Source: Sminthopsis crassicaudata (taxonomy: Eukaryota). Taken from it: a DNA stretch of 64,000 nt. Position 1 is the stretch's first letter. Every line of letters starts with the position of its first letter. The position numbers and the translations under genes were made by a program. The DNA lies in NCBI RefSeq assembly GCF_048593235.1, contig NC_133622.1, forward strand, positions 16,492,001-16,556,000, written 5' to 3'. Under the pieces are notes generated by a model. That model searched no databases. It was not told the origin of the DNA and saw only the letters and a list, made by a program, of their open reading frames with translations. Below are positions 14,798-64,000 of this stretch, piece after piece.

Positions 14798-14822
14798 GGG
14801 CGGCGGGGCCGGGCCGCGGGGC

Positions 14823-15290: not shown

Positions 15291-15411
15291 GCAGGAGGTG
15301 AGGACAGGAGGTGAGGGAAGCAGGAGGTGAGGGAAGCAGGAGGTGAGAGAACAGGAGGAGGTGAGGGCACAGGAGATGAGAGCAGGAGGTGAGGGAAGCA
15401 GGAGGTGAGGG
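15291..15411 (+). repeat. Minisatellite, ~16-bp unit GCAGGAGGTGAGGGAA, ~8 copies
   Basis: Directly visible; seven copies contain GAG|GTGAG. Confidence 0.95.
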
Positions 15412-19377: not shown

Positions 19378-19555
19378 TAATTTTATAATTTTTTTGACAG
19401 TATATGCATGAGTAATTTTTTTTTTATAACATTATCCCTTGTATTCATTTTTCCAAATTATCCCCTCCCTCCCTCCACTCCCTCCCCTAGATGACAGGCA
19501 ATTCAATTCCATACATTTTACATGTGTTACAATATAACCTAGATACAATATGTGT
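19378..19555 (-). mobile_element. 178-bp 5'-truncated young L1 with a perfect 18-bp TSD
   Basis: CTAACTCAGACCCTTAAT at 19360-19377 and 19556-19573 flanks L1 3'-end sequence. Confidence 0.95.
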
Positions 19556-19591
19556 CTAACTCAGACCCTTAATGTGGAAAAATTAACATTT

Positions 19592-19732
19592 TTTTTTCTT
19601 TTTTTTTTTTTTGAGGCTGGGGTTAAGTGACTTGCCCAGGGTCACATAGCTAGGAAGTGTTAAGTGTCTGAGACCAGACTTGAACTCGGGTCCTCGGCTG
19701 GTGCTCTATTCATTGCGCCCCCTAGCTGCCCC
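19592..19732 (-). mobile_element. CORE-SINE (WSINE1-like) with poly(A) tail and ~8-bp TSD
   Basis: Long T-run followed by the SINE body; TAACATTT at 19584-19591 and 19733-19740. Confidence 0.9.
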
Positions 19733-19948
19733 TAACATTTTCAATCTATAGAATTAAAAAAAAAAAAATCTATACTATTTGAGGTACATCTCCCTAACAA
19801 AAACATTATCTGGCAAAGCCCATTAGTTACCAATTATTAAACACCTATTATGTGCCACGCCTTGTGCTAGGGGCAAAGAGTTAGAATTGGAAGTCTTTCA
19901 GAATTAACATAAGAAACTGAAATTTCATTCCTTCACTTTCCTGTTTTC

Positions 19949-19987
<39 letters not shown>

Positions 19988-20928
19988 GAAAATGAAAGGA
20001 TCTCATTGGATTCATGTGAAGAGTAGATTCTACCCAATAGGTTAAAGCCATTCCTTGAGACATTCATTCCAGGAAACAATAAGAAAAGGGCACATGGATT
20101 GTTCACAGTTAAACATTCGAAATGCCAGCATTCTCCCCATGGTCTTTGTCCTAACAAGGAAATAAGAAAAGAGAAATTAATGGCATTATTCCCATCCCCG
20201 TCCCAAATAATTTCCCAGCTTTATAAGGGGTCTCATAATTCTGAGCAGACTCTGCATTATTTAGTTGCTCAAAATTCATGTTTCCTTCACACTTACAAGT
20301 CCCAAGAGCTGGTGATTTTAGAACTTGAGCCAGAACAGGAGCATGTTTAAGTGAGAGAGGAACAAGTGAATGTATAGTCAACGTTTCTCCCACTTTGCGA
20401 TTTAGTCGGGATGTAGCTTCTGACCCATAGATGGCATAATGTGTCAGTAGTAGTACCCTTCATCTCTGGGATAGCCTCAGAAATAGTATGGAACACTGCA
20501 GTGTCTGCTAGAGAGAGTGACCCTAGGATTAAAGGAGATGAAAGTGATTGATAAGTTTGAAGTAGAGAATGTGTGGAGGAGGAGCTCTTACTGAAGAAAA
20601 AGTTAAGAAAAAGTTAACATTTGTTGAGCTGGTGACTGACTATAAGACAGGTGGTCTGGATAGTTTAGGCCCATGAGGGGGAGAGAATGAATCCCGGGAG
20701 AAGCGACATGACTTGGAAAGGCTGGATGTGTGGTTGGGAAAGTCAAAGATTGAAGTTTAAAAAGTGACCCTATGATGTCATAACTTGGAAGAAAAAAATG
20801 GTGGGTTTTTAAAAATGAACTTTAGAATCATTGATTTTGCTTTGTTTTGTCAGTGTTATTGTATGTCTCATCTTTCTGGGGTCCTTGTTGATATAAAATC
20901 CAACTTAAAATTTCATTATTCACAGACC

Positions 20929-21013
20929 ATGGCTCCTTGGCCTGAATCGGATAACTCCCACGCTGATCCTAATAAGTTTGTTCAAGAGGAAAAAGAAAAA
21001 GGAAGCTCTAGCA
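20929..21013 (+). CDS. SLC34A2: SLC34A2 exon 2 coding part (acceptor cacag|acc at 20925/20926)
   Basis: ACC ATG G Kozak context; [28 protein letters not shown]; donor A|GTAAGT. Confidence 0.95.
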
Positions 21014-35424: not shown

Positions 35425-36450
35425 TTTTTCTATAAATCTTTTTATTTTTATTTTCACAACATATGCATGGATACTTTTTCAACATTGACCCTTGCATTGC
35501 CTCTTGTTTCAGATTTTCTTCCCTTAACCCCTCCCTAGATGGCAAACAATTTAATATATGTTAAGCATGTTGAAATATGTGTTAAATTCAATATGTATAA
35601 ATGTATTTATATAATTCTCTTTCTGCACAAGAGAAATCAGATTAAAAAAAAGAAAGCAAATGAATAAGAAAACAAAAAGCAAGTGAACAACAAAGAGAAT
35701 GAGAATGCTGTGTTGTGATCCATACTCAATTCCCACAGTCCTCTCTCTGGGTGTGGATGACACAAGATCATTGGAAGTGCCATCAATCATCTCACTGTTG
35801 AAAAGAGTCATGTCCAGTCTGAACTGATTGTCGTATAATATTGATGTTGCCATGTATAATGATCTGGTTCTGCTCATTCCCCTTAGCATCAGTTCCTGTA
35901 GATCTCTCCAAGCCTCTCAAATCATTCTCCTGATCATTTCTTATACAACAGTAATGTGCTATAACATTCATATACCATGTCTTATTCAGCCATTCTCCAA
36001 CTAATGGGCATCCATTCAGTTTGCAGCTTTTCACACTACACAAAGGGCTGCCACAAACATTTTTGCACATGGGGGTCCCTTTCCTTCCTTTAAGATCTCT
36101 GGGATGTAAGCCGTGTTAAGGACCATGCTTAAGTGAAGGGGAGGGTCAATTCTCAGAGAGCCTCCACAGCTGTGAATCATAACATCTGAAGGATTGCAGG
36201 GCAGCCCTTATTAGTGCAGATGTTCCCTGTAGATTGGGAATGAAATAAATTGGAAGCAAAAGGGAAGAGGAGGGAGGTCAGACAATGCAACTAACTGCCT
36301 CAGTGGAGAGGTGGGAGAATGCAACTGTCTCAGTCCTCCTTGTATCATCCTCTCACGTGAAGAGTTAGAACTCCAGCAATCACTGGCAGGTGGCTGCCCT
36401 ATCACAACAAAGCCCAATAGAAACACTGCTGGGTCAAAGGGTATGCACAA
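35425..36450 (-). mobile_element. L1 3' fragment interrupted by a solo LTR
   Basis: L1 homology stops at 36113 (gggatgtaagcc) and resumes at 36410 (aagcccaatagaaacactgctgggtcaaagggtatgcaca). Confidence 0.85.
36114..36409. mobile_element. Solo LTR (296 bp, TG...CA) with a 6-bp near-perfect TSD
   Basis: Begins TGTTAAGG and ends CAACA; flanks are AAGCCG (36108-36113) and AAGCCC (36410-36415). Confidence 0.75.
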
Positions 36451-37454
36451 TTATACAAGTTATTCTTGACAATTAATTCTTGTCAACCATTATTTACAAG
36501 TAATTGGAATTTTATTGTAATTCTATGATTTTTAGGAATTAAAAAAATTTACTTTAGTAGTGATGATTCATAAGCCAATTTGTGAATATTATGCTGAAGT
36601 TTATGTATAAACAACTTGTCAGCATAATTATAGTGGTGTTTTTAATGCAAATCTTGCAACTTAGAGCTATGATTTGGATGAGTATGTAGAATTTCTGAAC
36701 TATAATTCCATATCTTTTTGTGACCCTAGATAAATTGCTTGTTTATTTTGCATGCAGGAAAGTTTTATTTTGCATTCTTGAAAGACAGGGTGCCTTGAAA
36801 GACACACCTTTAAAACGCCAAAGGCGGGATTTTATTTCCTATCCTGAAGCACAAGTTTCTCCCATGATTCCCCATTAATTGGATGTTACAGAATTACAGG
36901 ACATGAATCTCCACTCTTTTTACATAGTCAGACCCTGCTCCCAAGTAGCTAAGAGAGGAGGGCTAAGGACAAATAATAAAAGATTCTTTTCACCTGACAC
37001 CTGACACCCCTGATTACAAAAGTCAGTCCCTGCTCACATGGAGTTTACATTCTTTTGGGGGAAGATAATTCCACCCTTGATTATTTCTTGAAGTCCATGT
37101 GGGTCATTTTTCTAATTTGTTTCAATTCTCTAGTTTAATTTTCATAACTGTGGAAACCCCAAATACCCATCCATTTCTTACAATTTTCCCCCTTTTTTCT
37201 TTTAATAATTTGGTTTCCGCATTCTTTTCAAATCGAAAAATTTGGCTAATTTTTACATCTTACTTCATAAAAATCTGTTAATCCTTTACACAGAATGAAT
37301 AGTTAATCCCTGAATTCTTTACCAATTATTCTGATGTGACTATACAAGGAGTAGATCTACTTCCAATTATAACAGAAGTCATTTAAAAAAAAAAAATTTG
37401 AAATGGACACTTTTGTACTTTGCAAGACTATAACTTGAAATAAGGAAAATTCTT

Positions 37455-39645
37455 TTTTTAAACTTTTTAAATTTTTTAAAATTATTTTTTATAATTATAA
37501 CATTTTCTTTGTTAGTACATATGCATAGGTTAATTTTTATTTTTATTATTATTATTTTTAACAACATTATCCCTTGTACTCCCTTCTGTTAAGAGTTTTT
37601 CCCCTCCTTCCCTCCACCCTCACCCCTAGATGGCAGGCATTCCCATACATATTAAACATCTTATAGTATATCCTAGGTACAATATATATGTGCAGAACCG
37701 AATTTTGTTGTTGTCGTTGTTGCAAAGGATGAATTGTATTCAGAAGGTAAAAATAATCTGGGAAGAGAAACAAAAACAAAACAAAACAAAAAAAACCAAT
37801 GCTCACAGTTTACACTCATTTCCCAGTGTTCCTTTTCTGGATGTAGCTGATTCTGTCCATCATTGATCAACTGGAATTGGATTAGCTCTTCTCTATGTTG
37901 AAGATTTCCACTTCCATCAGCATACATCCTCGTACAGTATTGTTGTTGAAGTGTACAGTGATCTTCTGGTTCTGCTCGTTTCACTCAGCATCAGTTGATG
38001 TAAGTCTCTCCAAGCCTCTCTGTATTCCTCCTGCTGGTCATTTCTTACAGAAAATAATATTCCATAACCTTCATATACCATAGTTTACCCAACCATTCTC
38101 CAATTGATGGACATCCATTCATCTTCCAGCTTCTAGCCACTATGAAAAGGCCTGCCACAAACATTTTGGCACATACAGGTCCCTTTCCGCTCTTTAGTAT
38201 TTCCTTGGGATATAAGCCCAATAGCAGCAATGCTGGATCAAAGGGTATGCACATTTTGATAAATTTTTGGACATAATTCCAGATTGCTCTCCAGAATGGC
38301 TGGATTCTTTCACAACTCCACCAACAATGCATCAGTGTCCCAGTTTTCCCACAGCCCCTCCAACATTCATCATTATTTGTTCCTGTCATCTTAGCCAATC
38401 TGACAGGTGTGTAGTGGTATCTCAGAGTTGTCTTAATTTGCATTTCTCTGATCAATAGTGATTTGGAACACTCTTTCATATGAGTGGAAATAGTTTTAAT
38501 TTCATCATCTGAAAATTGTCTGTTCATATCTTTGATCATTTATCAATTAGAGAATGACTTGATTTCTTTTAAATTAGAGTCAATTCTCTTTATATTTTGG
38601 AGATGGGCCTTTATCAGAACCTTTAACTGTAAAAATGTTTTCCCAATTTGTTACTTCCCTTCTAATCTTGTTTGCATTAGTTTTATTTGTGCAGAAACTT
38701 TTTAATTTGGTGTAATCAAAATTTTCTATTTTGTGATCAATTATGCTCTCTAGTTCTCCCTTGGACACAAACTCCTTCCTCCTCCACAAGACTGAGAGGT
38801 AAACCATCCCATGTTCCTCCAATTTATTTATGATTTCGTTCTTTATGCCTAAATCTTGGACCCATTTTGATCTAATCTTATTATGTGGCGTTAAATGTAG
38901 ATCCATGCCTAGTTTCTGCCATACTAATTTCCAGTTTTCCCAGCAGTTTTTGTCAAATAATGAATTCTTATCCCAAAAGTTGGGATCTTTGGGTTTGTCA
39001 AACACTAGATTGCTATTTTTAGTCACTATCTTGCCCTGTGAACCTAACCTATGCCACTGATCAACTAGTCTATTTCTTAGCCAATACCAAATGGTTTTGG
39101 TGACTGTTGCTTTATAATATAGCTTTAAATCAGGTACAGCTAGACCACCTTCATTTAATTTTTTTTTTTTCATTACTTCCCTTGAAATTCTCGACCTTTT
39201 GTTGTTCCATGTGAATTCTGTTGTTATTTTTTCTAGGTCATTAAAATAGTTTCTTGGGAGTCTGATTGGTATAGCACTAAATGAATAGATTAGTTTGGGG
39301 AGTATTGTCATCTTTATTATATTCGCTCGGCCTATCCAAGAGCACTGAATGTCTTTCCAATGATTTAAATCTGACTTTATTTTTGTGGCAAGTGTTTCGT
39401 AATTTTGCTCATATAATTCCTGACACTCCTTTGGTAGATATATTCCCTTTTATACTATCGACCGTTATTTTGAATGGAATTTCTCTTTGTATCTCTTGCT
39501 GTTGGATTGTGTTGATAATGTATAAAAATGCTGAGGATTTATGTGGATTTATTTTGTATCCTGCGACTTTGCTAAAATTCTGAATTATTTCTAATAGCTT
39601 TTTAGCAGAGTCTTTGGGGTTCTCTAAGTATACCATCATGTCATC
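37455..39645 (-). mobile_element. 2.2-kb 5'-truncated young L1 (ORF2 3' part plus 3' UTR) with a 12-bp TSD
   Basis: AGGAAAATTCTT at 37443-37454 and 39646-39657. ORF2 fragments at 39409-39639, 38580-39311 and 38045-38539 are in different frames. Confidence 0.95.
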
Positions 39646-39820
39646 AGGAAAATTCTTAATATGTTTTTTGTTACAGTAAATTATACCTTTTATGAAAGTC
39701 CTATATGTTTATAAAACTTGTTTCATGTTACCTTAATCTTCGTGTTATGTTGGTTTTTCACGTAAGAGAATTGTTGTCTAGTATAAAAGTTGAGTTGTAA
39801 CAATTATTTTCATATTTTAG

Positions 39821-39864
39821 TGTAGAAAATCACATGAAATTATGAAGTTCTAGAGTGATATCAG
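39821..39864 (+). pseudogene. ANAPC4: psiANAPC4 exon (EENSDEIIKLLGDVR)
   Basis: ttttag|t gta gaa aat cac at gaa att atg aag ttc TAG agt gat atc ag|ATacat: 1-nt deletion, a stop and a lost donor. Confidence 0.75.
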
Positions 39865-40253
39865 ATACATTTTCATGGAAATATTTGTGGTGATAAATAT
39901 AGGTTTCTTATTTTTAACTTAATTTGAGGAGGAAGTATTAAATGGATCGTTATGTGTTTGTACAATTTTTTTTTTCTTTTTCATTAAGCATTCTTTTAAC
40001 TTGATTTTATTCTATGGCCTTTCATTTTGTCAATTTAAAAAAATAGTTTTAATAGACTTGCATTCCTTTCCTATTTTTTTTTTTTTAAGAAAAGAAATTT
40101 TAATGGAGTAAAGTAGTTATGAATGAGATTTTATCTTTGACTCCTAGAGTTGGATGTTGTATTGCATTTAGGTCCCATCAAATATATTTATTATTAAGGT
40201 GGAGACATGGCACATAGACAAAAGAATTAGGGACATAGCGTGGACAAATTATA

Positions 40254-40708
40254 NNNNNNNNNNNNNNNNNNNNNNNNNNNNNNNNNNNNNNNNNNNNNNN
40301 NNNNNNNNNNNNNNNNNNNNNNNNNNNNNNNNNNNNNNNNNNNNNNNNNNNNNNNNNNNNNNNNNNNNNNNNNNNNNNNNNNNNNNNNNNNNNNNNNNNN
40401 NNNNNNNNNNNNNNNNNNNNNNNNNNNNNNNNNNNNNNNNNNNNNNNNNNNNNNNNNNNNNNNNNNNNNNNNNNNNNNNNNNNNNNNNNNNNNNNNNNNN
40501 NNNNNNNNNNNNNNNNNNNNNNNNNNNNNNNNNNNNNNNNNNNNNNNNNNNNNNNNNNNNNNNNNNNNNNNNNNNNNNNNNNNNNNNNNNNNNNNNNNNN
40601 NNNNNNNNNNNNNNNNNNNNNNNNNNNNNNNNNNNNNNNNNNNNNNNNNNNNNNNNNNNNNNNNNNNNNNNNNNNNNNNNNNNNNNNNNNNNNNNNNNNN
40701 NNNNNNNN
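40254..40708. other. Assembly gap (N run)
   Basis: Run of n characters. Confidence 1.
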
Positions 40709-41223
40709 GAAAATTTTCATCTTAGGTATAACTTCAGTTAGCCTTTCTAAGCTTCTGTTTCCTTATCTTTATAAACAGGGAATAATAACAGTTAAACCTT
40801 GTGGGCTTGTTGTGTGAATCCATAGCCCTAATATGTGCAGAGTGCTTTGTAAATCTTAGACTAGAAATGGCAGGTGTCATCTTAGTAGAGCTATGATGAT
40901 ACTGGTCACAGATAAGAAGCAGCACTGTATTGGTACTTTAATGATAATTTTTACTCTTATTATCTGCCAACAACCTGTTATCTTCCAGGTAGCAGGCTTT
41001 GCTCATTTGCACAGTTGAATTTTTATGCTGCTTTGGAAAAGATTAGGCATGTTTAGCTGAATTTGACCAACAAATCAGTAGACTTGTTTTGCTTTATCAA
41101 TTTCCACTGCAGGAGAACCTTAATATGTAGATTATATAGGAAAAGTCATTTAGAGCTGAGTTTTAGAACTTAATTATTTCTATTGTTGATTAGTCCTCAG
41201 CTTGTTGCCTTACTTTGAATTAG

Positions 41224-41308
41224 GCTTAATGCTCTTGTCCTTGGAGGAAACTCTGAGTTCATTGAGATCTATGCTTATGGAATGTACAAAATTGCCACTG
41301 TTACAGGG
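41224..41308 (+). pseudogene. ANAPC4: psiANAPC4 exon (RLNILVLGGSSGFIELYAYGMFKIARVTG), reading frame intact
   Basis: attag|; (R)LNALVLGGNSEFIEIYAYGMYKIATVTG; |GTGAGT. Confidence 0.93.
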
Positions 41309-42158
41309 GTGAGTTTTCCTTTTATATTTTCCCTATAATTTTTTTTAATACACCAGCTAATTCATTTGTGAGAGAAGATTCAAACACTAACTATTCTAAT
41401 TTTCAGTGATTGAAATAACTATTTCTCAAATACTGAGTGTATATTTTTTTTCTGAAAGGATTGATGAATATTTTCTTACAATCTTAGGAATTAATTAAAT
41501 TTGGAAGTTAGAGATTTCAGCTATAATTCATACAAAGTGTAAAAGTAAGAGACATAATACTCATAACAAGCAGGAGCTATTAGTTGCTAATGGAATTGAA
41601 GACAACTAACAAAAATGATTGAAATGCTTGTAGTTGCTTTATAACCTCACTTCTTGTTTATTATCTTTTTGCCGGCCTGTGGAGAATAAAAGCTAGAATT
41701 GGTGGCTAAAATACAGCTAAGCTAAATTAGTCACAGCTAGTTTTCTTTCTCTCCCCCGCACCAGAGCTAAATGCTTAGTGCTGAACTTGTTCCCTCCTCA
41801 ATTCTGCCTTCCCTCTCAGAGGGAGAAGAATTTCTGCTGCTGAACTCTTTAGTTGTGGAAACTGACTTTGTTGGGTAACCCAAGGGAAGAAGGGAGAAAA
41901 GAAACAGTGAGATCACTTCCCTGAATGAAGGCCCTAACTGTACAAGTTAGTTTGACACTTCAGTGCCCGTGGCAGAAGGCAGGCAATATCCTGATCCATG
42001 GAGATTTCTGTTGCATGAGCTGTCAGGTTTTCTAGGTTTTACATAGGTTTTTGCCTCATATATTATACACAACGGCAAAGTTGTGCATTAATATTAAAAA
42101 TGTTATTTGAGTGAAATGAACAAATAAAATTTATGACTGGAATCTTTTACCTTCTCAG

Positions 42159-42269
42159 GTTTCTGGTTCGTGTCTCGGCTTATGCTTATCAAGTGACTTG
42201 AAATCATTATCAGTTATTACAGAGACAGGAGATTCTACCAGTGTTATGTCAGAAATTTCATATTTTCAG
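42159..42269 (+). pseudogene. ANAPC4: psiANAPC4 exon (IAGTCLALCLSSDLKSLSVVTE...SEVSYFQ), reading frame intact
   Basis: ctcag|VSGSCLGLCLSSDLKSLSVITETGDSTSVMSEISYFQ|GTGAGT; 111 nt. Confidence 0.95.
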
Positions 42270-42829
42270 GTGAGTAAAACTGAGCTTCAGAGCAATGTGA
42301 AATACAGTCTATTTCTTGTAGACATGCTTTTCTTATCTAGTGAGTTCAGTGGCTGAGAACCATTTTGATGATGTATTGCTTAATAATATTAAAGACTGAG
42401 AGTTAGAGAGCTCTATAAGACCTGCAAAGATCTTCACATATATTCCCATTTCTGAGCTTTACATGACTGAGATAAGTACCAATGGTATTATTATCTCCAT
42501 TGAGATAGCTTGAGTCTCAGAGAGAAATGACTTGCCCATAGTCACATAGTAAATAGAATTCTATTCTGTAGAATATGTTCATACATATTCTGTCTGAAAC
42601 AGAATCAGAATCCAGAACTTCTTCCTTGACAATAAAACTCACCCATATCCAACATCCCATAAATACATAATATGGCCTTTATAACTCCAGCATCTTTTTT
42701 AGAGAAAATAGCTTTATGGGCATTGTGATTTCAGCAGAGAAAGCATTCATCAGAATTGGTTCTGTGTAGTAGTGGACGGCCTGTAGAAGCAGTAACATGG
42801 TTGGTCTGGTTATGGTGAATTCCACGTAA

Positions 42830-44860
42830 AGCAAACCTTAAAATTGTACAAAACTTATCAGTAACTACAATAAAAGACTGCAGGTCCTGGAAGTGTATCT
42901 ACTGACAATCAAAAAAAGTAGGTCTGGGCCAAAAATATCACAACCAGCAAAATTATTATTATTATTTTTAATAGTTTTTATTTACCAGATATATGCACGG
43001 GTAATTTTACAACATTGACAATTGCCAAACATTTTGTTCTAATTTTTCCCCTCCTTCTCCCCCCCACCCCGCCAGCCAGATAGCAGGTTGACCAATACAT
43101 GTTAAATAGTTAAGAATATAAATTAAATATAATATATATACATGACCAAACAGTTGTTTTGCTGTACAAAAAGAATCAGACTTTGAAATAGTGGACAATT
43201 AGCCTGTGAAGGAAATCCAAAATTCAGGTGGACAAAATGAGAGGGATTGGGAATTCTATGTAGTGGTTCATAGTCATCTCCCAGAGTTCTTTCACTGGGT
43301 GTAGCTGGTTCAGTTCATTACTGCTCTATTGGATCTGATTTGGTTCATCTCATTGTTGAAGACGGCCTTGTCCATCAGAATTGATCATCACATAGTATTG
43401 TTGTTGAAGTGTATAGTGATCTCCTGGTCCTGCTCATCTCACTCAGCATCAGTTCCTGTCAGTTTCTCCAGGCCTTTCTGAAATCATCCTGTTTGTCGTT
43501 TCTTACAGAACAATAATATTCCATAATATTCATATACCACATTTTATTCAGCCATTCTCCAATGGATGGGCATCCACTCAGTTTCCAGTTTCTGGCCACT
43601 ACAAAGAGGGCTGCCACAAACATTCTTGCCCTTTCCCTTCTTTAAGATCTCTTTGGGATACAAACCCAGTAGTAACACAGCTGGATCGAAGTGTATGCAC
43701 AGTTTAATAACTTTTTGAGCATAGTTCCAAATTGCTCTCCAGAATGGCTAGATGTATTATTCACAATTCTACCAACAGTATCCCAGTTTTCCCACATCCC
43801 CTCCAACATTGCACATTATCTTTCCCTGTCATTCTAGCCAATATGACAGGTGTGTAGTGGTATTTCAGAGTCAGCAAAATTATTTGTAATAATGAACAAG
43901 AGAAAATGGACATTCAGTGAACTTACAGATTTTCAAGACTTTCTATCAACCCAACCCAAAGTTAATAGAAAATTTAACATATAAGAATCCATATTAAAGA
44001 TCAGTTTTAAAGAACTCAACTCATGGACAAATTGTTTAAACATTCTTTTTTTTTTTTTTTAATATGGATAATGTATATGCTTAAGATTCACATTAGCAAT
44101 AATGTAGCTCAAAAGAATGGCAGTGTTAATGTAAAATAGTAATTATGTTATATAAATGAGGTTTAGAGAAAGAATAGACACAGAGGCATTAGAGGGGGAG
44201 GAGGACTTGCAATTCTGAAAACCTACTCATATCTGGAATGGGTTTAATAGGCAACACTACATATATAACATGAAGGCGGTATAGCACCCTCTAAAATCTG
44301 TAAAGAAATAAGAGAGGAGGGATGGGGCAGATGGGGAAGCAGAGGATGAAGGAAGAGACAAGGAAGGGATCCTTGGGTGGGGGGAGGTTAAGTAATAGCA
44401 AGTCAAGTTAGGAACAGAATTAAAGCAAAGAATCAGTAGGGATATGTGGTAGGGGATATATGTATGTATGTATGTACATATTTATACATAAATTAACTAT
44501 AACTTTCTTGAAGGGGATGATGGGGCATTTAAGAGGAGAAAAGAATAAATGAATGAGATGCTTAGTAGAGAACCAAAAAACAATTTACAAGAAGTAAAGA
44601 AAAATGGACATTCATGAATATAATTTCTTCTACTAATACACACCCACACACACCCACACACACAAACAGACACACATACACTTTTTTGATATGGTAATTT
44701 GTAATATATTTTGAATCCTCTATGATGTTCTATGATGTGCTGTGCTCGATAATGTTCTCTTTTGTTTTGCTTTATTTTGTTTTGTATTCCTTTTCTGTTT
44801 TTTTCTCATTCTGTTTTTTCAAATAAACAGAAAATAAGCAGAAAAAGCCAAAAGAAAATA
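42830..44860 (+). mobile_element. HAL1-like element (L1 ORF1 C-terminus plus long 3' UTR, no ORF2), interrupted by a later L1
   Basis: IVQNLSVTTIKDCRSW...KVGLGPKISQPAKL (42840-42957) continues after the insertion as FVIMNKRKWTFSELTDFQDFLSTQPKVNRKFNI* (to 43984). About 840 nt of non-coding sequence then leads to AATAAA (44822-44827) and an A-rich tail. Confidence 0.7.
42958..43871 (-). mobile_element. 5'-truncated L1 with a 13-bp TSD, nested in the HAL1-like ORF1
   Basis: CAGCAAAATTATT at 42945-42957 and 43872-43884. Confidence 0.95.
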
Positions 44861-45314
44861 ATTTTTAGAGTTTAATTTGGAAAATATTTCAAAAGGTATT
44901 ATAAATTATATAGCTTTTAAATGACAGTGCATTTTTAGAGGTCAGTGTTTAATTAAAAGTTCTGTTCTAAAACTGAGGATTTATATCAACCTCCATGATT
45001 TGACCAAACACTCATTTTGGCAATTAGTATAATCTGAAATATGCTTGTGGAAAATTTTAAATAGGTTATTTCAGTAGGAGGTTTGTTCAAATCATCTTTA
45101 GAATAGTCTTTGAAATTTATCTTGATGCTGGCTACTATTATTTATGTTTTTATCTTTTTCCTGTGAGGCTCAAAGCTAAATTCATTAAGGTCAGCACTTT
45201 ATCCATTATACTGTGTTCCCTCTTCTGAATTTAACAAGCTCATCTAATTGCTTCCTTTAAATTGGCATATTGTCCCTTCGGTGAATGCTAAATTATTTCT
45301 TTTTTTTAAATTAG

Positions 45315-45392
45315 GACTTGGAAAAAGCTTGGCCAGTCAATAGAGTCTTCATACTCCAATATACAGAAATTGGTCAAAAGTCACTTACAAAG
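45315..45392 (+). pseudogene. ANAPC4: psiANAPC4 exon (GLKKLGQSIESSYSSIQKLVISHLQ)
   Basis: ttag|...KKLGQSIESSYSNIQKLVKSHLQ..|GTATGA; 78 nt against 77 expected, i.e. a +1 frameshift at the 5' end. Confidence 0.93.
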
Positions 45393-45537
45393 GTATGATT
45401 ATTTGGAATACTTTAGCAAATGTAGCTGTTGAAATTAATTTAACTAAAATTTTGTAGTGATTCTAGTTATGGTTCTAACTGTGGTTCTTGAGCTTGTTAT
45501 TTTGGTTTATCAATCATTGAATTGGATATAGGAGGAG

Positions 45538-45936
45538 AATTTAAAAAGCAAATGTCCAAATCCATCTATCCCTTACCTCCATATTATTTTCTCTACTGCA
45601 TATACATTGACCCTTTTTCCTAGTTTAATAAAAGCATGTATCAAAATAAACAAATAAAAATAAAAGCCTGTGTCAATTTAAAAATAACTGAAAATTGACG
45701 TCATCAAAGATCCATTTATTACTGAGCAAAATCAGTTAATTTAAAAAGCGAATGTCTGAGTCCATCTGTCATCACCTCCATATTATTTTCTCTACTGCAT
45801 ATACATTGACCGTTTTTCCTAGTTTAATAAAAGCATATATCAAAATAAACAAATAAAAATAAAAGTCTATATCAATTTTAAAATAACTGAAAATTGACAT
45901 CATCACAGATCCATTTTACTATTGAGCAAAATCAGT
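45538..45936 (+). repeat. Tandem duplication, 200-bp unit x2
   Basis: ttaaaaagc at 45541 and 45741; both copies continue acctccatattattttctctactgcatatacattgacc...gagcaaaatcagt. Confidence 0.95.
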
Positions 45937-46114
45937 GAACAATAATGCTTCCTTATCACACAACTGACCTTTAAATGAGCAGATGTGAGCTGTATTTGGA
46001 CTTTGCTCTAGAATGGAAAATATGCATGCTTTATTATAAAACTATGTCTGATAATTTATTTTTAAGTAAATGTGATTGATGTTGTGTTGTCATGTAATAT
46101 GTTTGTTTCTCTAG

Positions 46115-46170
46115 CATCCAGAAACAATTTTTGAAAAGGAAAGTATTTCAATGCAGAAAGAATTGGTCAG
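46115..46170 (+). pseudogene. ANAPC4: psiANAPC4 exon (APDLYNRKGKYFNVERVGQ)
   Basis: ctag|...GKYFNAERIGQ|ATaaaa; 56 nt against 57 expected; donor GT>AT. Confidence 0.85.
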
Positions 46171-46434
46171 ATAAAACATTTTTATTGACTTTGGTTATCA
46201 TGCTAATTCTCTAACAATCTGTAAAAATTTATGGTACTATTAATCTGAATGCTTAATAATTGGTATGGTTTGATCATTTGATTTTGTATGGTTAATGCTA
46301 ATAAATCACTTCTAGGAGATCTAAAATTGAGATGAATGATTCTGCATACATAATACCATAAAATAGAAGCACTCCCTGTTCTTTGGCACAATTTCTTGTT
46401 TTCTTGAGTTTAGTTCTAAATAATTTGTTTCCAG

Positions 46435-46476
46435 TATTTGAAAGATGAAGATGATGATCATGTGTCACCACAAGGA
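46435..46476 (+). pseudogene. ANAPC4: psiANAPC4 truncated exon (YLKDEDDDLVSP)
   Basis: ttccag|YLKDEDDDHVSPQ; homology then ends abruptly and L2-like sequence follows. Confidence 0.85.
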
Positions 46477-46519
46477 GAAAAGATAATGAGTTCTCTTTTT
46501 GGTTGAATTTTAAAAGTCT

Positions 46520-47060
46520 ATGGCACATCCAGTTTGAGATGTTTGAAAGAAAATGAGAGAGGCAAGATTAGAGGTTAGCAGAGGGATGGGACACGTAGAC
46601 TGGGAAATCAGCAACATAGAGGTGGTCATAAAATCCATGGGCTTTCACCAAGTAGTATAGAGGGAGAAGAGAAAGAGACCCACCATGGAAGCCTGAGACT
46701 TACCTGCCTGGACAGGGCATAGTATGAATGGGGATGCAGCAAAGGATATTGAGATGCATGGTGAGCTATTGGATAGGAGAATCCTCCAGAGCAGCAGCAT
46801 GAAAGCAAAGAGAAGGGAAAGATTTTTGTGGGGGGAAAAGGGAACGGTATGAAGTGTAACACTGAGAAAAGGCCATCAGAACTCCTCGGCACCTTTGGAC
46901 AGAGTGGCTGCAGTGAGTGATGAGGTCAGAGGCCAGATGGCAAAGGGTTGAGGTGTAAGTGAGAGCAAAGGACGTGGAGGCAGGAAGAAGCTGCAGCTTT
47001 TTCTCTGAGTTTAACTAAGCATGAGCGGGGAGGACCAGGGTAAGGAGATGCTGTGAGCTA
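46520..47060 (-). mobile_element. L2 remnant
   Basis: gtagactgggaaatcagcaacatagagg...agggagaagagaaagaga...ggccatcaga...gaggtcagaggccagatggcaaaggg. Confidence 0.55.
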
Positions 47061-47785
47061 AGGAAGCTCTATTTTCCGGACAGATCTGATTGTTTATTCC
47101 TAGTTCCTGGTGTTACACTAGAAGAACGTTGCTTGACTTTTTTTTATTTATCCTCCACGCAAACTGGCATTCCTGGGAGTAAATCTAGAATTCTTTCCCA
47201 TTCAATAAACATTCAAGATACCACTAGAAATATTAAAAAAAAAAAAAAAAGAATTAGTGATAAAATCCCTGCTCTCAATAGTCTAGTGGGTTGGGAGAAA
47301 TAGCAGGATGTATCCAGATATGTAACTTTTTAAACTACAAGATTGTCACAATTTTTTTTTTTTTTTTGAGGACAGTGATTCACTATGCGTGTTGTGAGAG
47401 GTAGTATGACATATTAGATAGAGTGCTCCTCTGACAAAACTAGCTGAGTGGCTGGAAAATGACTTCACTTCTCAATGTTTTGGGGAATTCTCTAGTCAAA
47501 GTGCAGAGAAGGTGCCAGCCTACTTTGGAGCAGGTTCTCTGATCATGAACAAATTTGTTTCTGTATTCTTGGTTTCATGAATGTGTAATCAAAAATCTCG
47601 TTTGATCTATCTGTCATCAATAATAGAACAGCAGGACAGGGGGAATTTAGAAGAAAATAGAATGCATCCAAATATAATGACTCTTGATCTTTTTCTTTTT
47701 CCCCTCCCTCTGCCAGTTTAATGTCTGTGCTTTAGTGATCCTTCAGTTAAAGGAGGATCTCTCAATATAATACATTTTCCTCTAG

Positions 47786-47925
47786 CTCCTACGACTGTGT
47801 TAATGCACATCTTTATGATGATGAAATGATAACAGTCACTCTTAAGGTCTTAGTTCAGTTACCATTATCTTTGGTATACACTAAGGAAGACACTCTCGAG
47901 GAGTTCAGCAGGACAGCTATTAAAG
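47786..47925 (+). pseudogene. ANAPC4: psiANAPC4 exon (YSCLDAQFYDDETVTVVLK...LLVQLPLSLVY)
   Basis: ctag|SYDCVNAHLYDDEMITVTLKVLVQLPLSLVYTKED...|GTACAA; ~10-codon internal deletion (DTVGREGRDR) and a phase shift at the 3' end. Confidence 0.9.
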
Positions 47926-48558
47926 GTACAATGATATGGATAATTACTTCTCTCAGCTAGTAGTTAAATTAAATGTATTTTTAAAAATACATTTAGTTAT
48001 TTAGGGTATAATTGGTAAGAGTAATATATTGGGTAACTGAAAAGCAGGGAATTCCCCTCTGTAATTGTACCTTCTGTTGTTAGAACAAGGTGAGGTATAC
48101 TTGGGTGGGATGAAATGATCTCCTCAAATCCATATCCCAAAAAAGCCCTAGAATAGCATTAATAGAGATTTGTTGGAAATAGAGAATAGTGGAACAAAGA
48201 GAAAATATTTAGCAAGATTATGAAGATCTTGGTGATTTTTTAATCAAAGATGATTTCCCAGACTAGCTTTTGCTTAGGCAGGCCAGAGACCCAAAATTGA
48301 ATCTTATCTTTGATCTCACTAGTTGTGGGATCTTGGGCAAGACCTTAGCCTCTTTGGCTTCAGTAAAATCTGTAAAATCAGAGGATTAGGCTAGCTGAAT
48401 TTTGAAATCTTTTCCATCTCTAAATCTATGAGCTTGTGATCCTAAAACTATAGGCTTTTTTTCTTTTTCAAGAGAAGCATGCTAAATGAACTTGGATAGA
48501 AGTTGAAGGCACAAAAAATGAAGGGAAATTCTACTCATTATGGTTTAACTCTGGGTAG

Positions 48559-48678
48559 GCTTGATGAACAGAGTGATCTTATACCTACATTGTCTTCCTG
48601 GAGAGTCAGTGGAGAATACTGAAGAATATGAAAGTGCAGTATGTTGCTGTGAATGGTTTTCAGAAAGTTTCTTGTGTA
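48559..48678 (+). pseudogene. ANAPC4: psiANAPC4 penultimate exon (RLDEQ...WRLLESMKAQYVAGNGFRKVSCV)
   Basis: gtag|LDEQSDLIPT..(frameshift)..ESQWRILKNMKVQYVAVNGFQKVSCV|GTATTT; 120 nt against 124 expected. Confidence 0.92.
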
Positions 48679-48860
48679 GTATTTATATTTGAATAGGGCT
48701 TTTAAAATTTGTTATGGCATATCACTTGGATACTTTGGATCCTTAGCTGTTCAGTTTTGTGTTCAATTGTTCAGTTTTGTGTTCAGAGAGTATTAAGTTA
48801 AAACCAAACACTCTATATTTTTATAATCCACATATTCCTTTAATATATCAGAAGTCTAAA

Positions 48861-49380
48861 GATTTCAGAAAGGCCTGGAAAGACTTACATGAACTGATGC
48901 TGAGTGAAATGAGCAGGATCAGGAGATCATTATACATGGCAACAACAATACTGTATGAGGATCAATTCTGATGGAGGTGACTCTCTTCAACAATGAAATG
49001 AATCAAATCAGGTCCATTTGTAGAACCAGCTACACCCAGTGAAAGAATTCTGGGAAATGAGTGTGAACCACAACATAGCATTTCCAATCCCTCTGTTTTT
49101 GTCCGCTTGCATTTTTGGTTTCCTTCTCAGGTTAATTTTACATTATTTCCAAGTCCAATTCTTCTTGTGCAGCAAAATAACTGTATAAATATGTATACAT
49201 ATATTGTATTTAACATATACTTTAACATATTTAACATGTATTGGTCTACCTGCCATCTTGGGGAGAGAGTCAGGGGAAGGAGGGGAAAAGTTGGAACAGA
49301 AAGTTTTGCAAGGGTCAATGCTGAAAAATTACCCATGCATATATCTTGTAAATAAAAAGCTATAATAAAAATATATATAC
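48861..49380 (+). mobile_element. 5'-truncated L1 with a 12-bp TSD (1 mismatch) in the last psiANAPC4 intron
   Basis: CAGAAGTCTAAA (48849-48860) and CAGAAGCCTAAA (49381-49392); REAWKDLHELMLSEM-type sequence; AATAAA and an A-rich tail. Confidence 0.9.
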
Positions 49381-49585
49381 CAGAAGCCTAAATCTAGTAA
49401 TTTTAGAATAAATTGAGATAAATGAGTTATTTCCCTTTAAAAAATCTTTTTCCAAGAAAATTTCAGTTTGTGCTTCTATTTTACAATTGCTGAAAAATAT
49501 ATTTATTGGGTTGCTCAAAGGTATTGATTTTTAAAAATTAATATCTTAAATATATTTAAAACTAAGTCTACTTATATTTCTTTAG

Positions 49586-49802
49586 TTACACCCAAATCTC
49601 TATTAGAGTATGTGAAATGGATGTAAACGATGGGGAAGTTGAAGAATAAGATGAGGATGAGGAAGAGGAATTTTCATCCCATCATGTGCTTGGTGAGCAG
49701 GAAGAAGTAATTCAATCTGCAGATAACTAAGAAAATGTTGCCAATGAATCTGCCGATCTGGTGGATGCAGTGGAAGATCAGGAATCTAACTTAGATTCAT
49801 AA
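49586..49802 (+). pseudogene. ANAPC4: psiANAPC4 terminal exon (LSSNLRHVRVFEMD...acidic tail...LDS*)
   Basis: tttag|LHPNL..RVCEMDVNDGEVEE*DEDEEE...N*ENV...ESNLDS TAA; a frameshift and two internal stops. Confidence 0.9.
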
Positions 49803-50184
49803 TCTGAGCTGCAATTATTTTGTATGTTTTCATTATGTTTGTTAATAAGTAGGTGTGGACTAAGATTATTTTCTTTTAAACACCTTAATTCTTTCTTTGT
49901 TCCAAAGAAAGAAATAATTAATTATCTTGTGAACAAGGCATATTTTCTTTAAATCTGCTTCATCTTCCAGAAATGTAACCATTGGAAGGACATTTCCTTT
50001 TGCTGATGTTTCTTTATAAAACTGCCTGAAGAACTGTAGTTTTTAAAGCAAACATTAATTGAATGTGAGGAAGGTAATTCAGTGTTTTCTGCTTCTCAAA
50101 AAGTATCAGGACTTATTCCTCTTAGCACAATGAGTTTACATGAAAGCAGTTGTCATTTATTACTGAAGGAGGCTATTCAGCTTT

Positions 50185-50357
50185 CCTTTTTTTTTTTTTT
50201 TTTTATTTATTTTTTAGCTAAGGCAATTGGGGTTAAGTGACTTGCCCATGGTCACACAGCTGGGACATGTAGTATTAAGTGTCTGAGATCAAATTTGAAC
50301 TCAGGTCCCCCTGACTTCAGGGCTGGTGCTCTATCCACTGCACCACCTAGCTGCCCC
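50185..50357 (-). mobile_element. Full-length CORE-SINE (WSINE1-like) with a 12-bp TSD
   Basis: CTATTCAGCTTT at 50173-50184 and 50358-50369. Confidence 0.95.
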
Positions 50358-51296
50358 CTATTCAGCTTTTTTAGCATTAAAATTTTTTTAATCAACGAGA
50401 TGTATTATTTTTATAGCATTTCTTCTTTGTAAAATCCCTGAATGCTTTGTATTTGTTACTTGTATATTTCCTTTATCAGTTAAAAATGTGAATGCCTGCA
50501 GTGCTAAGTTTTTAAAATGTTAAAAGATTGATGTCCTTATCAATTAAATATCCCTAATACTTTTTGTCCCTAAGTGGATAACTTTCCACATTCTGTTATT
50601 GTACTTGATTGAGTTTTTGATTCTTTGAATCAACAATATTCACAGATACAACTACTGGATATTAAGGACATATAGGGGACATCTGCCCAATTTTACTTCT
50701 TGGGAACATTAGGAGTAATAGATTCAAGTAAATATAATTTAATATTAGCGTTAATGAACTCCTATGCACTGTTAATTTTTTAATATCTCTCCCAAATTAA
50801 TGGGTATTGTTTCTGTGCAACTGTCAATATTCCCACCTCTTACCTCAGTCCTTGTTGCAGTGTTTAGATCCATCCATAAATCAATTTATAAAGGCTCAGG
50901 ATTTCTTTAGACTGGAAAGTGCAATCGAATGAATAGTTATGTGTAAGACTATTCTGTGCTTTGGCTGCTGTTTCATATATTGTTTCTTTCCTTACACACT
51001 GCTAATAGATTGGTCAGAATGCATCTGTTGGTTTGTCCTTTAGAAGAGTGAGTGAAACTGAAGAGAATTCGTTGTTTTAGTCGTGCTCAGGAAACTGTAG
51101 AATTGCCTTCTTTTGTACTGTGACAGATTCTGTAGCATAACATAGCATCCTTCCCCCAAAAAGTATTCACATATGTATTGATTAATTCTTAATTAATGAG
51201 TATTTAGGTCGTGGTGCAACACTTAGTTAGTTAAGAGAGAGGATAAGATGTTTGGAAGAAGTGTGGGTTACATACAAGAAGCCATAGAGCTAGCTC

Positions 51297-51515
51297 AGTC
51301 TAGTTTGTGAGAGCCAATTGTTCTGATTTCAGTGGGAGCATTTACACACTGGAAATCAGACAATACTGCAATCAGGGATTGGTCTATTGTTCTGTCATAA
51401 TCTAGATTTAAGAAAATAACGAAGAAAATGTTAATAGGGAAGATTGAACACAAGTTGATTTGGATACATGTTTTACTTGTTTTTGGAGAGCAGATTATTA
51501 AACATGCGCCTGAGC
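51297..51515. mobile_element. Probable non-autonomous hAT-type DNA transposon remnant
   Basis: gagagccaattgtt...gagcatttacac...aatcaggg...gagagcagattattaaacat resembles a common marsupial MITE, recalled from memory. Confidence 0.4.
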
Positions 51516-51924
51516 ATCCCTGGTTTTATATGTAGAATATTTCTTGATGGTCAAGCTAGATCGGGGCACAAAGTTAGAAAAAAAGTGACATATCCAATTT
51601 TGGGGGCAAATTATTGATGCTTATCCTTACAATGAATTTTGATATCTCAAGGAATTATTGAATTCTAAAATATCTCTTCTCATTTAATAACTGCACTACT
51701 GGGTACAGTAGTGTTTTGATTCATTTGGAAATGTTCTGAGCTGGGGAAAAGTTGAAATGAAGACATCTAAATTCCTTGCCTTAAAGTGAACCTATAAACA
51801 GAATGAAATAAGGTGACTGTAATTACTTAAATATTGAAGATGGGACAAATGAATGGGGTTAAAATATGGCTGTGATCATTTTGAAATTGGAGATTTGTTC
51901 TTTCCCCTTAATTTCTTATATTCC

Positions 51925-62760: not shown

Positions 62761-64000
62761 CAGCAGACATATGAATATTGCTTTTTCCTCCAATGTTTCA
62801 CAGAACTTCCCCTCCAGAAGGGAGATGGTAGAGAGGAGTAGGTCATGGTGGTTTGGCAAGGCTGGCACATGCCAGCTCTCTGAGTACCTTGCTGCTGAGT
62901 ACCTTAAGGACTGAGTGACCTTTCCATCTGACTTGAAGCTGAAACCTAGAATGAGGGCTTCGGAGCATTAATCTTGCTTTCTCTTCATATCCCCAGTGAT
63001 TTCACAGTAAGTGATTAGCAAATGATTTTTTTTTTCCATTCATGCATGTTATATTCCAGCCAAACCGGAATTAGTTACAAGTTGTTCTCTGTTCTCATAC
63101 TTGACTCTCCTGCTCCATTATTCAAGCAGGTAAACTGACCTTCCTCTCATATTTAGAATATACTGCTTTCTCCTGTTGAAATGCTCTTCATAGTCAATCA
63201 ATAAAAATGTATTAAGTGACTGTTAGGTGCCAAGTGATGCAGTGATGAGAATGCAAAAAAAGATAGCATTTTTTATTTTTGCCTTCAAGGAGCTTACAAT
63301 CTAATATATGGGGAAAGCTGAAAAAGGTGGGGGATGGGGGGTGGGGGGAACAGATACCTGGTTTGTATGCATGACAGGGAGGTAGGGTGCTGGTGGTAAG
63401 AAACAAGATGAAGTCTTGCAGCTGCAGAATTGGTTTCATGTTGCAGAATGATGAGTTTCTGGAGATCCTGAAGTCCAGCAGAGTAGCTATTAGGAAATGA
63501 GATCAGTGCCTTGTTCGTTCTCCTTAAATGGAAGATCTGGAGTTGGAGGGAACTCTCCAATCAATATCCCTTTCTCCAACCAGAAGGAGATAGGAACTCT
63601 AAGGGTGGGGTGAGGGGATGCTAAAGAGGTGAGTTACAAAGGTGATTTCAATTTGCATAATGATAATTTTGTGAAGAACATGAAGTCTAAGAGAGCAGCC
63701 AGGTGGGAAAACAGAAGGAAAAAATGGCAACAATCACAGCCAGAACTGCTGACTGTTATTAGAGAGAAAAGTCCTAGAAAATCTTTCTGTGCTCCAGAAA
63801 ATTGTAAAACTACCAATTAATAACTTTTGGTATACAGCTCTGAGCCCCTATCAAGGTAAACTATGCCAGAGTTGTGAAATCTCTTTCTCTTCACTCTCTC
63901 TCTGCTGCAGCTGTCCAATGACACACAAAGTTCAGTAATGCAACTGTTAAACCATGTGCTTCATAATAACTACCTTATTACCTGCTTAAATAAGCAGAAG

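What the first reader, a model, noticed from the sequence alone, without database searches (positions are those of the whole stretch)
39821..49802. Hidden unprocessed ANAPC4 pseudogene, invisible in the ORF track
Seen: nine short segments, in the correct order and with AG/GT boundaries at the expected phases, translate to APC4 peptides (LVLGG..FIE.YAYGM, CLSSDLKSLSV, KKLGQSIESSYS.IQKLV.SHLQ, GKYFN.ER.GQ, YLKDEDDD.VSP, YDDE..TV.LK/LVQLPLSLVY, MK.QYVA.NGF.KVSCV, LDS*). They carry frameshifts, stops and two GT>AT donors. Many intervening exons are missing, so roughly the last three-quarters of the gene is compressed into 10 kb. I know of no description of such a copy. Inference: a genomic (DNA-level) duplicate that decayed through large internal deletions.
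Basis: partly seen in the sequence, partly recalled or inferred. Interest (0 to 1): 0.72.

Follow-up and report, generated by a model that had tools for sequence, protein, structure and literature searches.

The report
Decayed partial ANAPC4 gene copy
This stretch is a dead, 5'-truncated DNA-level copy of the cell-cycle gene ANAPC4, left beside a duplicated phosphate-transporter gene in a dasyurid marsupial; it is an ordinary duplication relic, though parts of it look re-copied from a working gene much later.

Summary
Observation and interpretation both hold. Nine remnants of the 28 coding exons of ANAPC4 (exons 6, 7, 8, 13, 19, 20, 26, 27, 28) lie in order on the + strand at 39821-49802. The DNA between them aligns to the introns and 3' flank of the working ANAPC4 genes of Antechinus, Tasmanian devil and koala. 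So this is an unprocessed copy, not a retrocopy.

Seven remnants carry frameshifts, stops, two GT>AT donors or truncation. Nineteen exons are missing, and eleven lie in three deletions of 1.7-8.8 kb. The copy starts in intron 3, about 3 kb behind an SLC34A2-like gene, not beside ZCCHC4 as in other dasyurids. The N gap lies inside intron 6 and should hide no exon.

A second individual's DNA contig keeps the 5-bp frameshift and one stop, so at least those are not assembly errors.

New here: divergence is mosaic. Four blocks are 7-9% from the dasyurid genes, the rest about 18%, and block borders sit at deletion junctions. Exons 7 and 8 are intact. Block-wise gene conversion is the likeliest cause. 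Mis-assembly beside the gap is not excluded.

I did not see the working ANAPC4 of this genome directly. The scan noted this stretch before (s1-153306).

The parts
36454..37454 (+). 5' limit of homology: three pieces of ANAPC4 intron 3 (36454-36597, 36621-36749, 37394-37454). No trace of coding exons 1-5 upstream.
   Evidence: Sensitive blastn to L001 17414-17867. That L001 stretch is unique in both the window and L001. tblastn finds nothing credible for residues 1-143.
37492..39643 (.). LINE-1 insertion that splits the intron-3 remnant. ORF2 fragments lie on the - strand.
   Evidence: Many repeat hits. ORFs at 38045-38539 and 38580-39311 on the - strand.
39821..39864 (+). Remnant of coding exon 6: 1-bp deletion after 39829, in-frame TAG at 39851-39853, donor GT>AT at 39865-39866. 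CE4 and CE5 are lost in a 579-bp deletion with its junction near 39754-39757.
40254..40708 (.). Assembly gap inside intron 6. Flanks are collinear (L001 19245 and 19356). No exon is expected in it. The divergence class changes across it.
   Evidence: Not filled.
40732..42676 (+). Low-divergence block holding intact exon 7 (41224-41308) and exon 8 (42159-42269), both with AG acceptor and GTGAGT donor.
   Evidence: blastn 90.5% over 1963 bp. Intron K2P to the dasyurid genes is 0.069. Only 1 copy-specific change in 196 exon bases.
42677..44856 (.). Non-homologous replacement where exon 9 should be: 279 bp unique, a LINE piece at 42956-43871, and 985 bp with no match.
45315..45392 (+). Remnant of exon 13 with a 1-bp insertion at 45320 (frameshift). 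Donor GT is kept. Exons 10-12 are lost in a 1659-bp deletion with its junction at about 45185-45188.
45538..45936 (+). Tandem 199-bp duplication (2 copies, 90% alike). Each unit carries the junction of the 8785-bp deletion that removed exons 14-18.
46115..46170 (+). Remnant of exon 19: 1-bp deletion after 46123, 12 substitutions in 56 bases, donor GT>AT at 46171-46172.
46435..46471 (+). First 37 bases of exon 20. The remaining 57 bases are lost in a 1541-bp deletion.
46474..47514 (+). Intron-20 remnant, a low-divergence block. It is followed by the 4314-bp deletion that removed exons 21-25.
47786..47925 (+). Remnant of exon 26 with deletions of 30, 3 and 1 bp. The last one shifts the frame. 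23 copy-specific changes in 140 bases.
48559..48677 (+). Remnant of exon 27: 4-bp deletion after 48588 (frameshift) and a 4-bp deletion in the donor consensus (GTAAGT becomes GTATTT).
48861..49373 (.). Interspersed-repeat insertion in the last intron, an inverted copy of 42963-43485.
49586..49802 (+). Remnant of the last coding exon (28): 5-bp and 3-bp deletions, TAA at 49647-49649 and at 49728-49730, native stop kept at 49800-49802.
   Evidence: Contigs of two DNA samples.
49803..51537 (+). Copied 3' UTR and downstream flank of ANAPC4. A further piece lies at 63659-63993.
   Evidence: blastn to L001 43564-44918 and 45659-46004.
32290..32706 (+). Context: last coding exon of the upstream SLC34A2-like gene. 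The relic begins about 3-4 kb downstream of it.
   Evidence: PDB 9z60/9z64 residues 517-639, E 9e-28. A second exon at 27683-28084 matches residues 191-259.

Best explanation
This is an unprocessed, 5'-truncated pseudogene of ANAPC4 (subunit 4 of the anaphase-promoting complex). A DNA segment running from ANAPC4 intron 3 through its 3' flank was copied as part of the tandem block duplication that amplified the neighbouring SLC34A2 gene. The copy had no promoter and lacked the first coding exons, so it was dead on arrival. It then lost 19 of 28 coding exons, 16 of them in six mapped deletions, took in LINE and other repeat insertions, and collected frameshifts, stops and splice-site losses. It most likely has no function of its own. 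Several homology blocks, including exons 7 and 8, were later overwritten by gene conversion from a working or younger ANAPC4 sequence. That would explain why they are much less diverged and why two exons are still perfect. Shown: the homology, the lesions, the position and the mosaic divergence. Inferred: the duplication mechanism, gene conversion as the cause of the mosaic, and an intact parent gene elsewhere in this genome.
For: Collinear APC4 protein hits. Collinear blastn chain over introns and 3' flank to Antechinus ANAPC4, 73-90% identity, E down to 0, and likewise to devil and koala. Twenty-eight coding exons mapped on Antechinus, nine with remnants and seven of those damaged. Exon divergence in the damaged remnants is 76 copy-specific changes in 690 bases (11%), which matches the copy's intron branch of 0.09-0.11, so they evolve neutrally. 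The working gene sits about 7 kb behind ZCCHC4 in Antechinus and devil. Here the copy sits behind an SLC34A2-like gene, and no CE1-5 or second copy is in the window. The SLC34A2 family is reported as expanded in the dasyurid ancestor (PMC12866920). In a second individual (X5), a contig over 49374-49802 is 98% alike with a single 3-bp gap, so it keeps the 5-bp frameshift and the second TAA. Mosaic: intron K2P to the dasyurid genes is 0.069 (95% bootstrap interval 0.055-0.085) and 0.090 (0.069-0.114) in four blocks, against 0.181 (0.159-0.204) elsewhere. Antechinus-devil distance is uniform at 0.036-0.048. Block borders coincide with deletion junctions or insertions. CE7 and CE8 have 1 copy-specific change in 196 bases. 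About 7.6 would be expected from the block's intron branch of 0.039, a Poisson probability of about 0.004.
Against: I never saw the intact ANAPC4 of this genome. The protein collection holds no APC4 from this species, and the laid contigs did not clearly show it. That tool filters human-like conserved sequence without notice. The left border of the youngest block is an assembly gap, so a mis-join could mimic gene conversion there. Contigs of a possible RNA run carry a variant of the 3' end, so transcription is not excluded. The old blocks are slightly further from the dasyurid genes than koala is. Without a rooted tree, the duplication could pre-date Dasyuromorphia rather than be dasyurid-specific.
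Confidence: 0.88

Rival explanations
1. This is the species' only, working ANAPC4 gene, and the lesions and missing exons are assembly or sequencing errors.
For: One assembly gap lies in the region. Exons 7 and 8 are perfect. The working gene was not seen directly.
Against: At least 14 separate small lesions lie in seven exons, and 19 exons are absent. The exons without remnants are 1-5, 9-12, 14-18 and 21-25. Damaged exons diverge as fast as introns. The locus is not beside ZCCHC4. Contigs from a second individual reproduce the 5-bp frameshift and a stop. APC4 is a core APC/C subunit in the solved human complexes.
Confidence: 0.02
2. The relic is real, but the block 40709-42676 (intact exons 7-8) is an assembly chimera. 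It would be sequence from the working gene or from a younger copy, joined in at the gap and at the homology break at 42676. On this reading the mosaic is partly an artefact.
For: The divergence class switches exactly across the N gap. The block's distance to Antechinus and devil (0.069) is what an orthologue would show. DNA runs hold two or more further ANAPC4-3'UTR-like variants, so similar copies exist that could confuse an assembler.
Against: From 40709 onward the sequence has no further gap through 42676 into clearly relic sequence. Three other low-divergence blocks lie inside that gap-free stretch, which a single mis-join cannot explain. Borders at heterology junctions are what conversion tracts would show.
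Confidence: 0.15
3. The relic keeps a function: a non-coding transcript, a read-through 3' extension of the SLC34A2-like gene, or exons 7-8 used in some transcript and conserved for that reason.
For: Exons 7 and 8 keep consensus splice sites and near-perfect sequence. Contigs matching a variant of the 3' end occur in a run guessed to be RNA (X21).
Against: The kind of run X21 is a guess, and its 847 million letters of contigs look more like DNA. No joints were seen. Introns of the same block are also little diverged, which points to copying rather than exon-specific selection in place. There is no Rfam match and no promoter or first exon.
Confidence: 0.07
4. It is a processed (retrotransposed) ANAPC4 pseudogene.
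For: None beyond its being a dead copy away from the parent position.
Against: Intron sequence is kept between the exon remnants, acceptor AG sites are kept at all nine remnants, and the 3' flank beyond the gene is copied.
Confidence: 0.01

Closest known systems
Working ANAPC4 genes of dasyurid marsupials (Antechinus flavipes XP_051821862.1, locus L001; Sarcophilus harrisii XP_003773387.1, loci L002/L003)
   Same: Same exon order, exon phases and intron sequence. 73-90% nucleotide identity over about 7 kb of alignable DNA. Exons 7 and 8 differ by 1-2 bases.
   Different: The relic lacks exons 1-5, 9-12, 14-18 and 21-25 and part of exon 20. It carries frameshifts, three stops and two dead donors. 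It is not next to ZCCHC4.
Unprocessed pseudogenes in tandem segmental duplications that exchange sequence with their parent gene, for example human CYP21A1P/CYP21A2 and GBAP1/GBA1 (from my own knowledge, not tested here)
   Same: A DNA-level copy with introns, disabling lesions and internal deletions, with patchy low-divergence tracts suggesting gene conversion with the parent.
   Different: Here the copy is only a hitch-hiking 3' part of a neighbour of the amplified gene (SLC34A2). The direction and timing of any conversion are unknown, and no effect on the parent gene is shown.
SLC34A2 gene-family expansion in the dasyurid ancestor (PMC12866920)
   Same: The relic lies directly behind one SLC34A2-like copy, in the orientation expected if an ANAPC4(3' part)-SLC34A2 block was duplicated in tandem.
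   Different: That paper reports only orthogroup counts and does not mention ANAPC4. The old blocks here suggest the first duplication may be older than crown dasyurids.

Membership tests
Unprocessed (duplicated) pseudogene | Keeps the intron-exon structure and intron sequence of the parent gene | tested here: met
   Collinear blastn chain through introns 3, 5-8, 9, 12-13, 18-20 and 25-27 and the 3' flank. AG acceptors at all nine remnants.
Unprocessed (duplicated) pseudogene | Disabling lesions that exclude a full-length product | tested here: met
   Frameshifts in six exons, three in-frame stops, two GT>AT donors and 19 exons absent. Part of this is confirmed in a second individual.
Unprocessed (duplicated) pseudogene | Neutral evolution of former coding sequence | tested here: met
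   Seven damaged exons show 76 changes in 690 bases (11%), against a copy intron branch of 0.09-0.11. Exons 7-8 are the exception.
Unprocessed (duplicated) pseudogene | An intact parent gene elsewhere in the same genome | not testable with these tools
   No whole-genome search of this species was available, and no APC4 of this species is in the protein cluster. Inferred from synteny in two dasyurids and from the constrained history of the exon 7-8 block.
Functional APC4 (Pfam ANAPC4_WD40 PF12894 + ANAPC4 PF12896 + WD40_APC4_C-half PF23405) | Open reading frame covering the WD40 propeller and the helical insert | tested here: not met
   Only fragments match: PF12896 positions 100-125 and PF23405 positions 55-104 and 127-157. 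About 37% of codons have any remnant.
Processed pseudogene (retrocopy) | Introns absent, poly(A) tail, random insertion site | tested here: not met
   Introns and the non-transcribed 3' flank are present.

The most novel reading that the evidence does not exclude
The relic is not inert. It and the essential ANAPC4 gene, or sister relics in the SLC34A2 array, keep exchanging whole homology blocks by gene conversion. Tract borders would be fixed by the relic's own deletion junctions. The relic would then be a standing source of disabling variants for an essential cell-cycle gene, as CYP21A1P is for CYP21A2. It would also be a natural system for measuring how heterology limits conversion tracts.
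Probability: 0.2. Interest if true: 0.45.

Novelty: new member of a known kind. Interest (0 to 1): 0.25.

Why it matters
Mostly for annotation. Gene finders could call a spurious short 'APC4-like' gene from the two perfect exons, and read mappers could misplace ANAPC4 reads on this copy. The relic also marks one breakpoint of the block duplication that built the marsupial SLC34A2 array, in ANAPC4 intron 3. Its oldest blocks give a minimum age for that duplication, near or before the split of dasyuromorphs from diprotodonts on a clock reading. The mosaic divergence is a tidy example of sequence exchange confined to homology blocks, if it survives a long-read check.

Tried and rejected
- **Large representative search.** With one 39-aa exon it returned mostly ORF fragments and a 577-aa snake model. 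That model served as bait in the word search for full-length marsupial APC4.
- **Second ANAPC4 copy in the window.** A self-comparison, and a search for unique homology between the window's two ends, found only interspersed repeats.
- **Pfam on SLC34A2-like ORFs.** No hits. The PDB search worked.
- **Rfam over 34-52 kb.** Nothing.
- **Read laying.** Only contigs were available, so expression could not be judged. The working gene's last exon was not clearly seen. The variant V2 at first looked like the real 3' UTR because it is ancestral at 10 of 16 sites. Its continuation beyond 50141 departs from a motif kept in Antechinus, devil, koala and this relic, so I do not call it the parent gene.
- **Rooting with more outgroups.** The bilby isoform was not on record.
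- **Joined exon model.** All searches were exon by exon, by reference.
- **The N gap.** Not filled.
Full report

Yes.

Searched exon by exon and by reference, the pieces match APC4 and nothing else of note:
- Pfam ANAPC4 (PF12896, positions 100-125) for 45310-45429.
- Pfam WD40_APC4_C-half (PF23405) for 47751-47957 and for 48577-48693, the latter at E 2e-12.
- Human APC4 chains from solved APC/C structures, at residues 171-202, 200-242, 329-354, 633-683 and 705-734, in that order along the window.

To get a full-length reference I used one 39-aa exon in the representative search. One of its hits then served as bait in the word search. That gave marsupial APC4 proteins, among them Antechinus flavipes P0079 (802 aa) and its cluster mate from the Tasmanian devil, P0147.

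tblastn of P0079 on the window gives a collinear + strand chain for residues 144-802 and nothing credible for residues 1-143.

**2. What is it?**

I fetched the working ANAPC4 loci of Antechinus (L001), Tasmanian devil (L002, L003) and koala (L004). In Antechinus and devil the gene lies about 7 kb behind ZCCHC4. I mapped P0079 onto its own locus as 28 coding exons, CE1-CE28, all with AG/GT borders.

blastn of the window against L001 gives a collinear chain that runs through introns as well as exons (the first row also uses):

| Window | L001 | Content |
|---|---|---|
| 36454-37454 and 39643-39757 | 17414-17984 | intron 3 |
| 39754-39880 | 18563-18690 | CE6 |
| 39895-40249 | 18851-19245 | intron 6 |
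| 40732-42676 | 19356-21275 | CE7, CE8 |
| 44857-45188 | 22292-22582 | intron 9 |
| 45185-45618 | 24241-24684 | CE13 |
| 45813-46242 | 33469-33902 | CE19 |
| 46305-46471 | 34135-34297 | start of CE20 |
| 46474-47514 | 35838-36896 | intron 20 |
| 47575-48169 | 41210-41884 | CE26 |
| 48173-48860 | 42310-42996 | CE27 |
| 49413-50193 | 43170-43961 | CE28 and 3' UTR |
| 50358-51537 and 63659-63993 | 43943-46004 | flank beyond the gene |

Kept introns and a copied non-transcribed flank make this a DNA-level copy, not a retrocopy.

The missing exons fall into mapped losses (L001 coordinates):

| Exons lost | Size of loss |
|---|---|
| CE4-5 | 579 bp |
| CE9 | about 1 kb, replaced by 2.2 kb of unrelated DNA that includes a LINE piece |
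| CE10-12 | 1659 bp |
| CE14-18 | 8785 bp |
| last 57 bases of CE20 | 1541 bp |
| CE21-25 | 4314 bp |

The junction of the 8785-bp deletion was later duplicated in tandem, as 199 bp x 2 at 45538-45936.

CE1-3 are not present. Unique homology begins in intron 3, just after a LINE.

The N gap (40254-40708) lies inside intron 6. Its flanks map 110 bp apart in Antechinus, with no exon between them. The two sides are therefore collinear and the gap should hide nothing coding. I did not fill it.

**3. Lesions**

| Exon | State in the relic |
|---|---|
| CE6 | 1-bp deletion, TAG at 39851-39853, donor GT>AT |
| CE7 | intact |
| CE8 | intact, one Ile>Val change |
| CE13 | 1-bp insertion |
| CE19 | 1-bp deletion, 12 changes in 56 bases, donor GT>AT |
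| CE20 | truncated after 37 bases |
| CE26 | deletions of 30, 3 and 1 bp |
| CE27 | 4-bp deletion, plus a 4-bp deletion that weakens the donor (GTAAGT to GTATTT) |
| CE28 | 5-bp and 3-bp deletions, TAA at 49647-49649 and at 49728-49730, original stop kept |

**4. Are the lesions assembly errors?**

Only Logan contigs were available for read laying, over 49374-50200.
- Contigs from the probable source sample (X1) match exactly. This is not independent support.
- In a second individual from another study (X5), a 450-bp contig covers 49374-49802 at 98% identity with a single 3-bp gap.
- That contig therefore keeps the 5-bp frameshift, the 3-bp deletion and the second TAA. Its own 3-bp deletion removes the first TAA.
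- At least this exon is truly broken in the population.

The other lesions rest on the assembly alone. They are numerous, and the damaged exons have diverged as fast as introns: 76 copy-specific changes in 690 bases, against a copy intron branch of 0.09-0.11.

**5. Context**

Upstream on the same strand lies an SLC34A2-like gene.
- Its exon at 27683-28084 matches SLC34A2a structure residues 191-259.
- Its last coding exon at 32290-32706 matches residues 517-639.

In other vertebrates ANAPC4 lies upstream of SLC34A2 on the same strand. That is from my own knowledge and was not tested here.

The order here, SLC34A2-like gene then the 3' part of ANAPC4, is what a tandem duplication of an ANAPC4(3')-SLC34A2 block would leave.

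PMC12866920 reports a significant expansion of the SLC34A2 orthogroup in the dasyurid ancestor.

Earlier notes of this scan, which I did not check, name the genome as dunnart and describe an SLC34A2 array reaching more than 388 kb past the window. I found no paper that mentions an ANAPC4 pseudogene in marsupials.

**6.

I used intron columns only, at least 8 bases away from any gap, and Kimura two-parameter distances with bootstrap intervals.

| Blocks | Relic to dasyurid genes | Dasyurid genes to koala |
|---|---|---|
| 40732-42676 | 0.069 (0.055-0.085) | 0.182 |
| 46474-47514, 48173-48860, 49413-50193 | 0.090 (0.069-0.114) | 0.220 |
| all other blocks | 0.181 (0.159-0.204) | 0.154 |

The Antechinus-devil distance is uniform at 0.036-0.048, so local mutation rate is not the cause.

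In the old blocks the relic joins the dasyurid lineage at a depth of 0.071. Half the dasyurid-koala distance is about 0.077. On a clock reading, the first duplication is therefore near or before the origin of Dasyuromorphia.

In the young blocks the joining depth (0.030-0.037) is what a species-level split from Antechinus plus devil would give.

A sliding count shows that the switches between classes fall at the N gap, at deletion junctions (46471/46474, 47514/47575, 48169/48173) and at insertions.

CE7 and CE8, in the youngest block, have one copy-specific change in 196 bases. About 7.6 would be expected if they had drifted like the block's introns (Poisson probability about 0.004). This block therefore spent most of its history inside a gene under selection.

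The simplest reading is block-wise gene conversion from the working ANAPC4 or from a younger copy, with tracts stopped by heterology.

The alternative for 40.7-42.7 kb is a mis-join at the gap. I cannot exclude it. I give it about 0.15, because three other young blocks lie in gap-free sequence.

**7. Other copies**

The DNA contigs also show two further 3'-UTR-like variants in both individuals.
- V1 shares derived states with the relic. It is either an allele or a sister relic.
- V2 is ancestral at 10 of 16 differing sites. Beyond 50141, however, it departs from a motif that Antechinus, devil, koala and this relic all keep.

I therefore do not claim V2 as the parent gene. More ANAPC4-3' relics in the array are likely. 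The read tool drops human-like conserved contigs without notice, which may be why the parent's last exon was not seen.

**8. Function**

Most likely none. The relic has no promoter, no first exons and no open frame. There is no Rfam match. No joints or proven RNA were seen.

I put 0.88 on a dead hitch-hiking relic of the SLC34A2 block duplication. Within that reading, I put about 0.6 on gene conversion as the cause of the mosaic.

**9. Novelty**

This is a new, undescribed member of a very familiar kind, the unprocessed pseudogene in a tandem duplication. It matters mainly for annotation and for dating the SLC34A2 array, and specialist interest is low. The mosaic pattern is a modest extra.

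Noticed in passing
window 49779-50175 (contigs of runs X1, X5, X21): Two further ANAPC4-3'UTR-like variants exist in DNA of two individuals. V1 is about 3% from the window and shares its derived states. V2 is about 5% away and mostly ancestral, but diverges beyond 50141. This suggests sister relics in the SLC34A2 array or deep haplotypes.
   Followed up: partly
window 45538-45936: A 199-bp tandem duplication (90% alike) in which each unit contains the junction of the 8.8-kb deletion. The duplication therefore post-dates the deletion.
   Followed up: partly
window 39754-39757, 45185-45188, 45614-45618: blastn segments on the two sides of three deletion junctions overlap by 4-5 bases. This is compatible with microhomology-mediated deletion.
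   Followed up: no
window 12000-16000: A G+C-rich island (up to 59% G+C over 2 kb) lies upstream of the SLC34A2-like gene. It may be that gene's promoter region.
   Followed up: no
window 43872-44856: 985 bp with no match to the ANAPC4 loci of three marsupials or to the rest of the window. It sits where exon 9 and its flanks should be. Its origin is unknown.
   Followed up: partly
window 49645-49647 in run X5: A 3-bp deletion polymorphism in a second individual removes the first premature TAA of the last exon. The frameshift and the second TAA remain.
   Followed up: yes
L001 1-3005, L002 1-2907: In Antechinus and Tasmanian devil, ZCCHC4 (Zn_ribbon_GRF plus N6-adenine methylase domains) ends about 7 kb upstream of ANAPC4 on the same strand. 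This is a useful synteny anchor for finding the parent gene.
   Followed up: no
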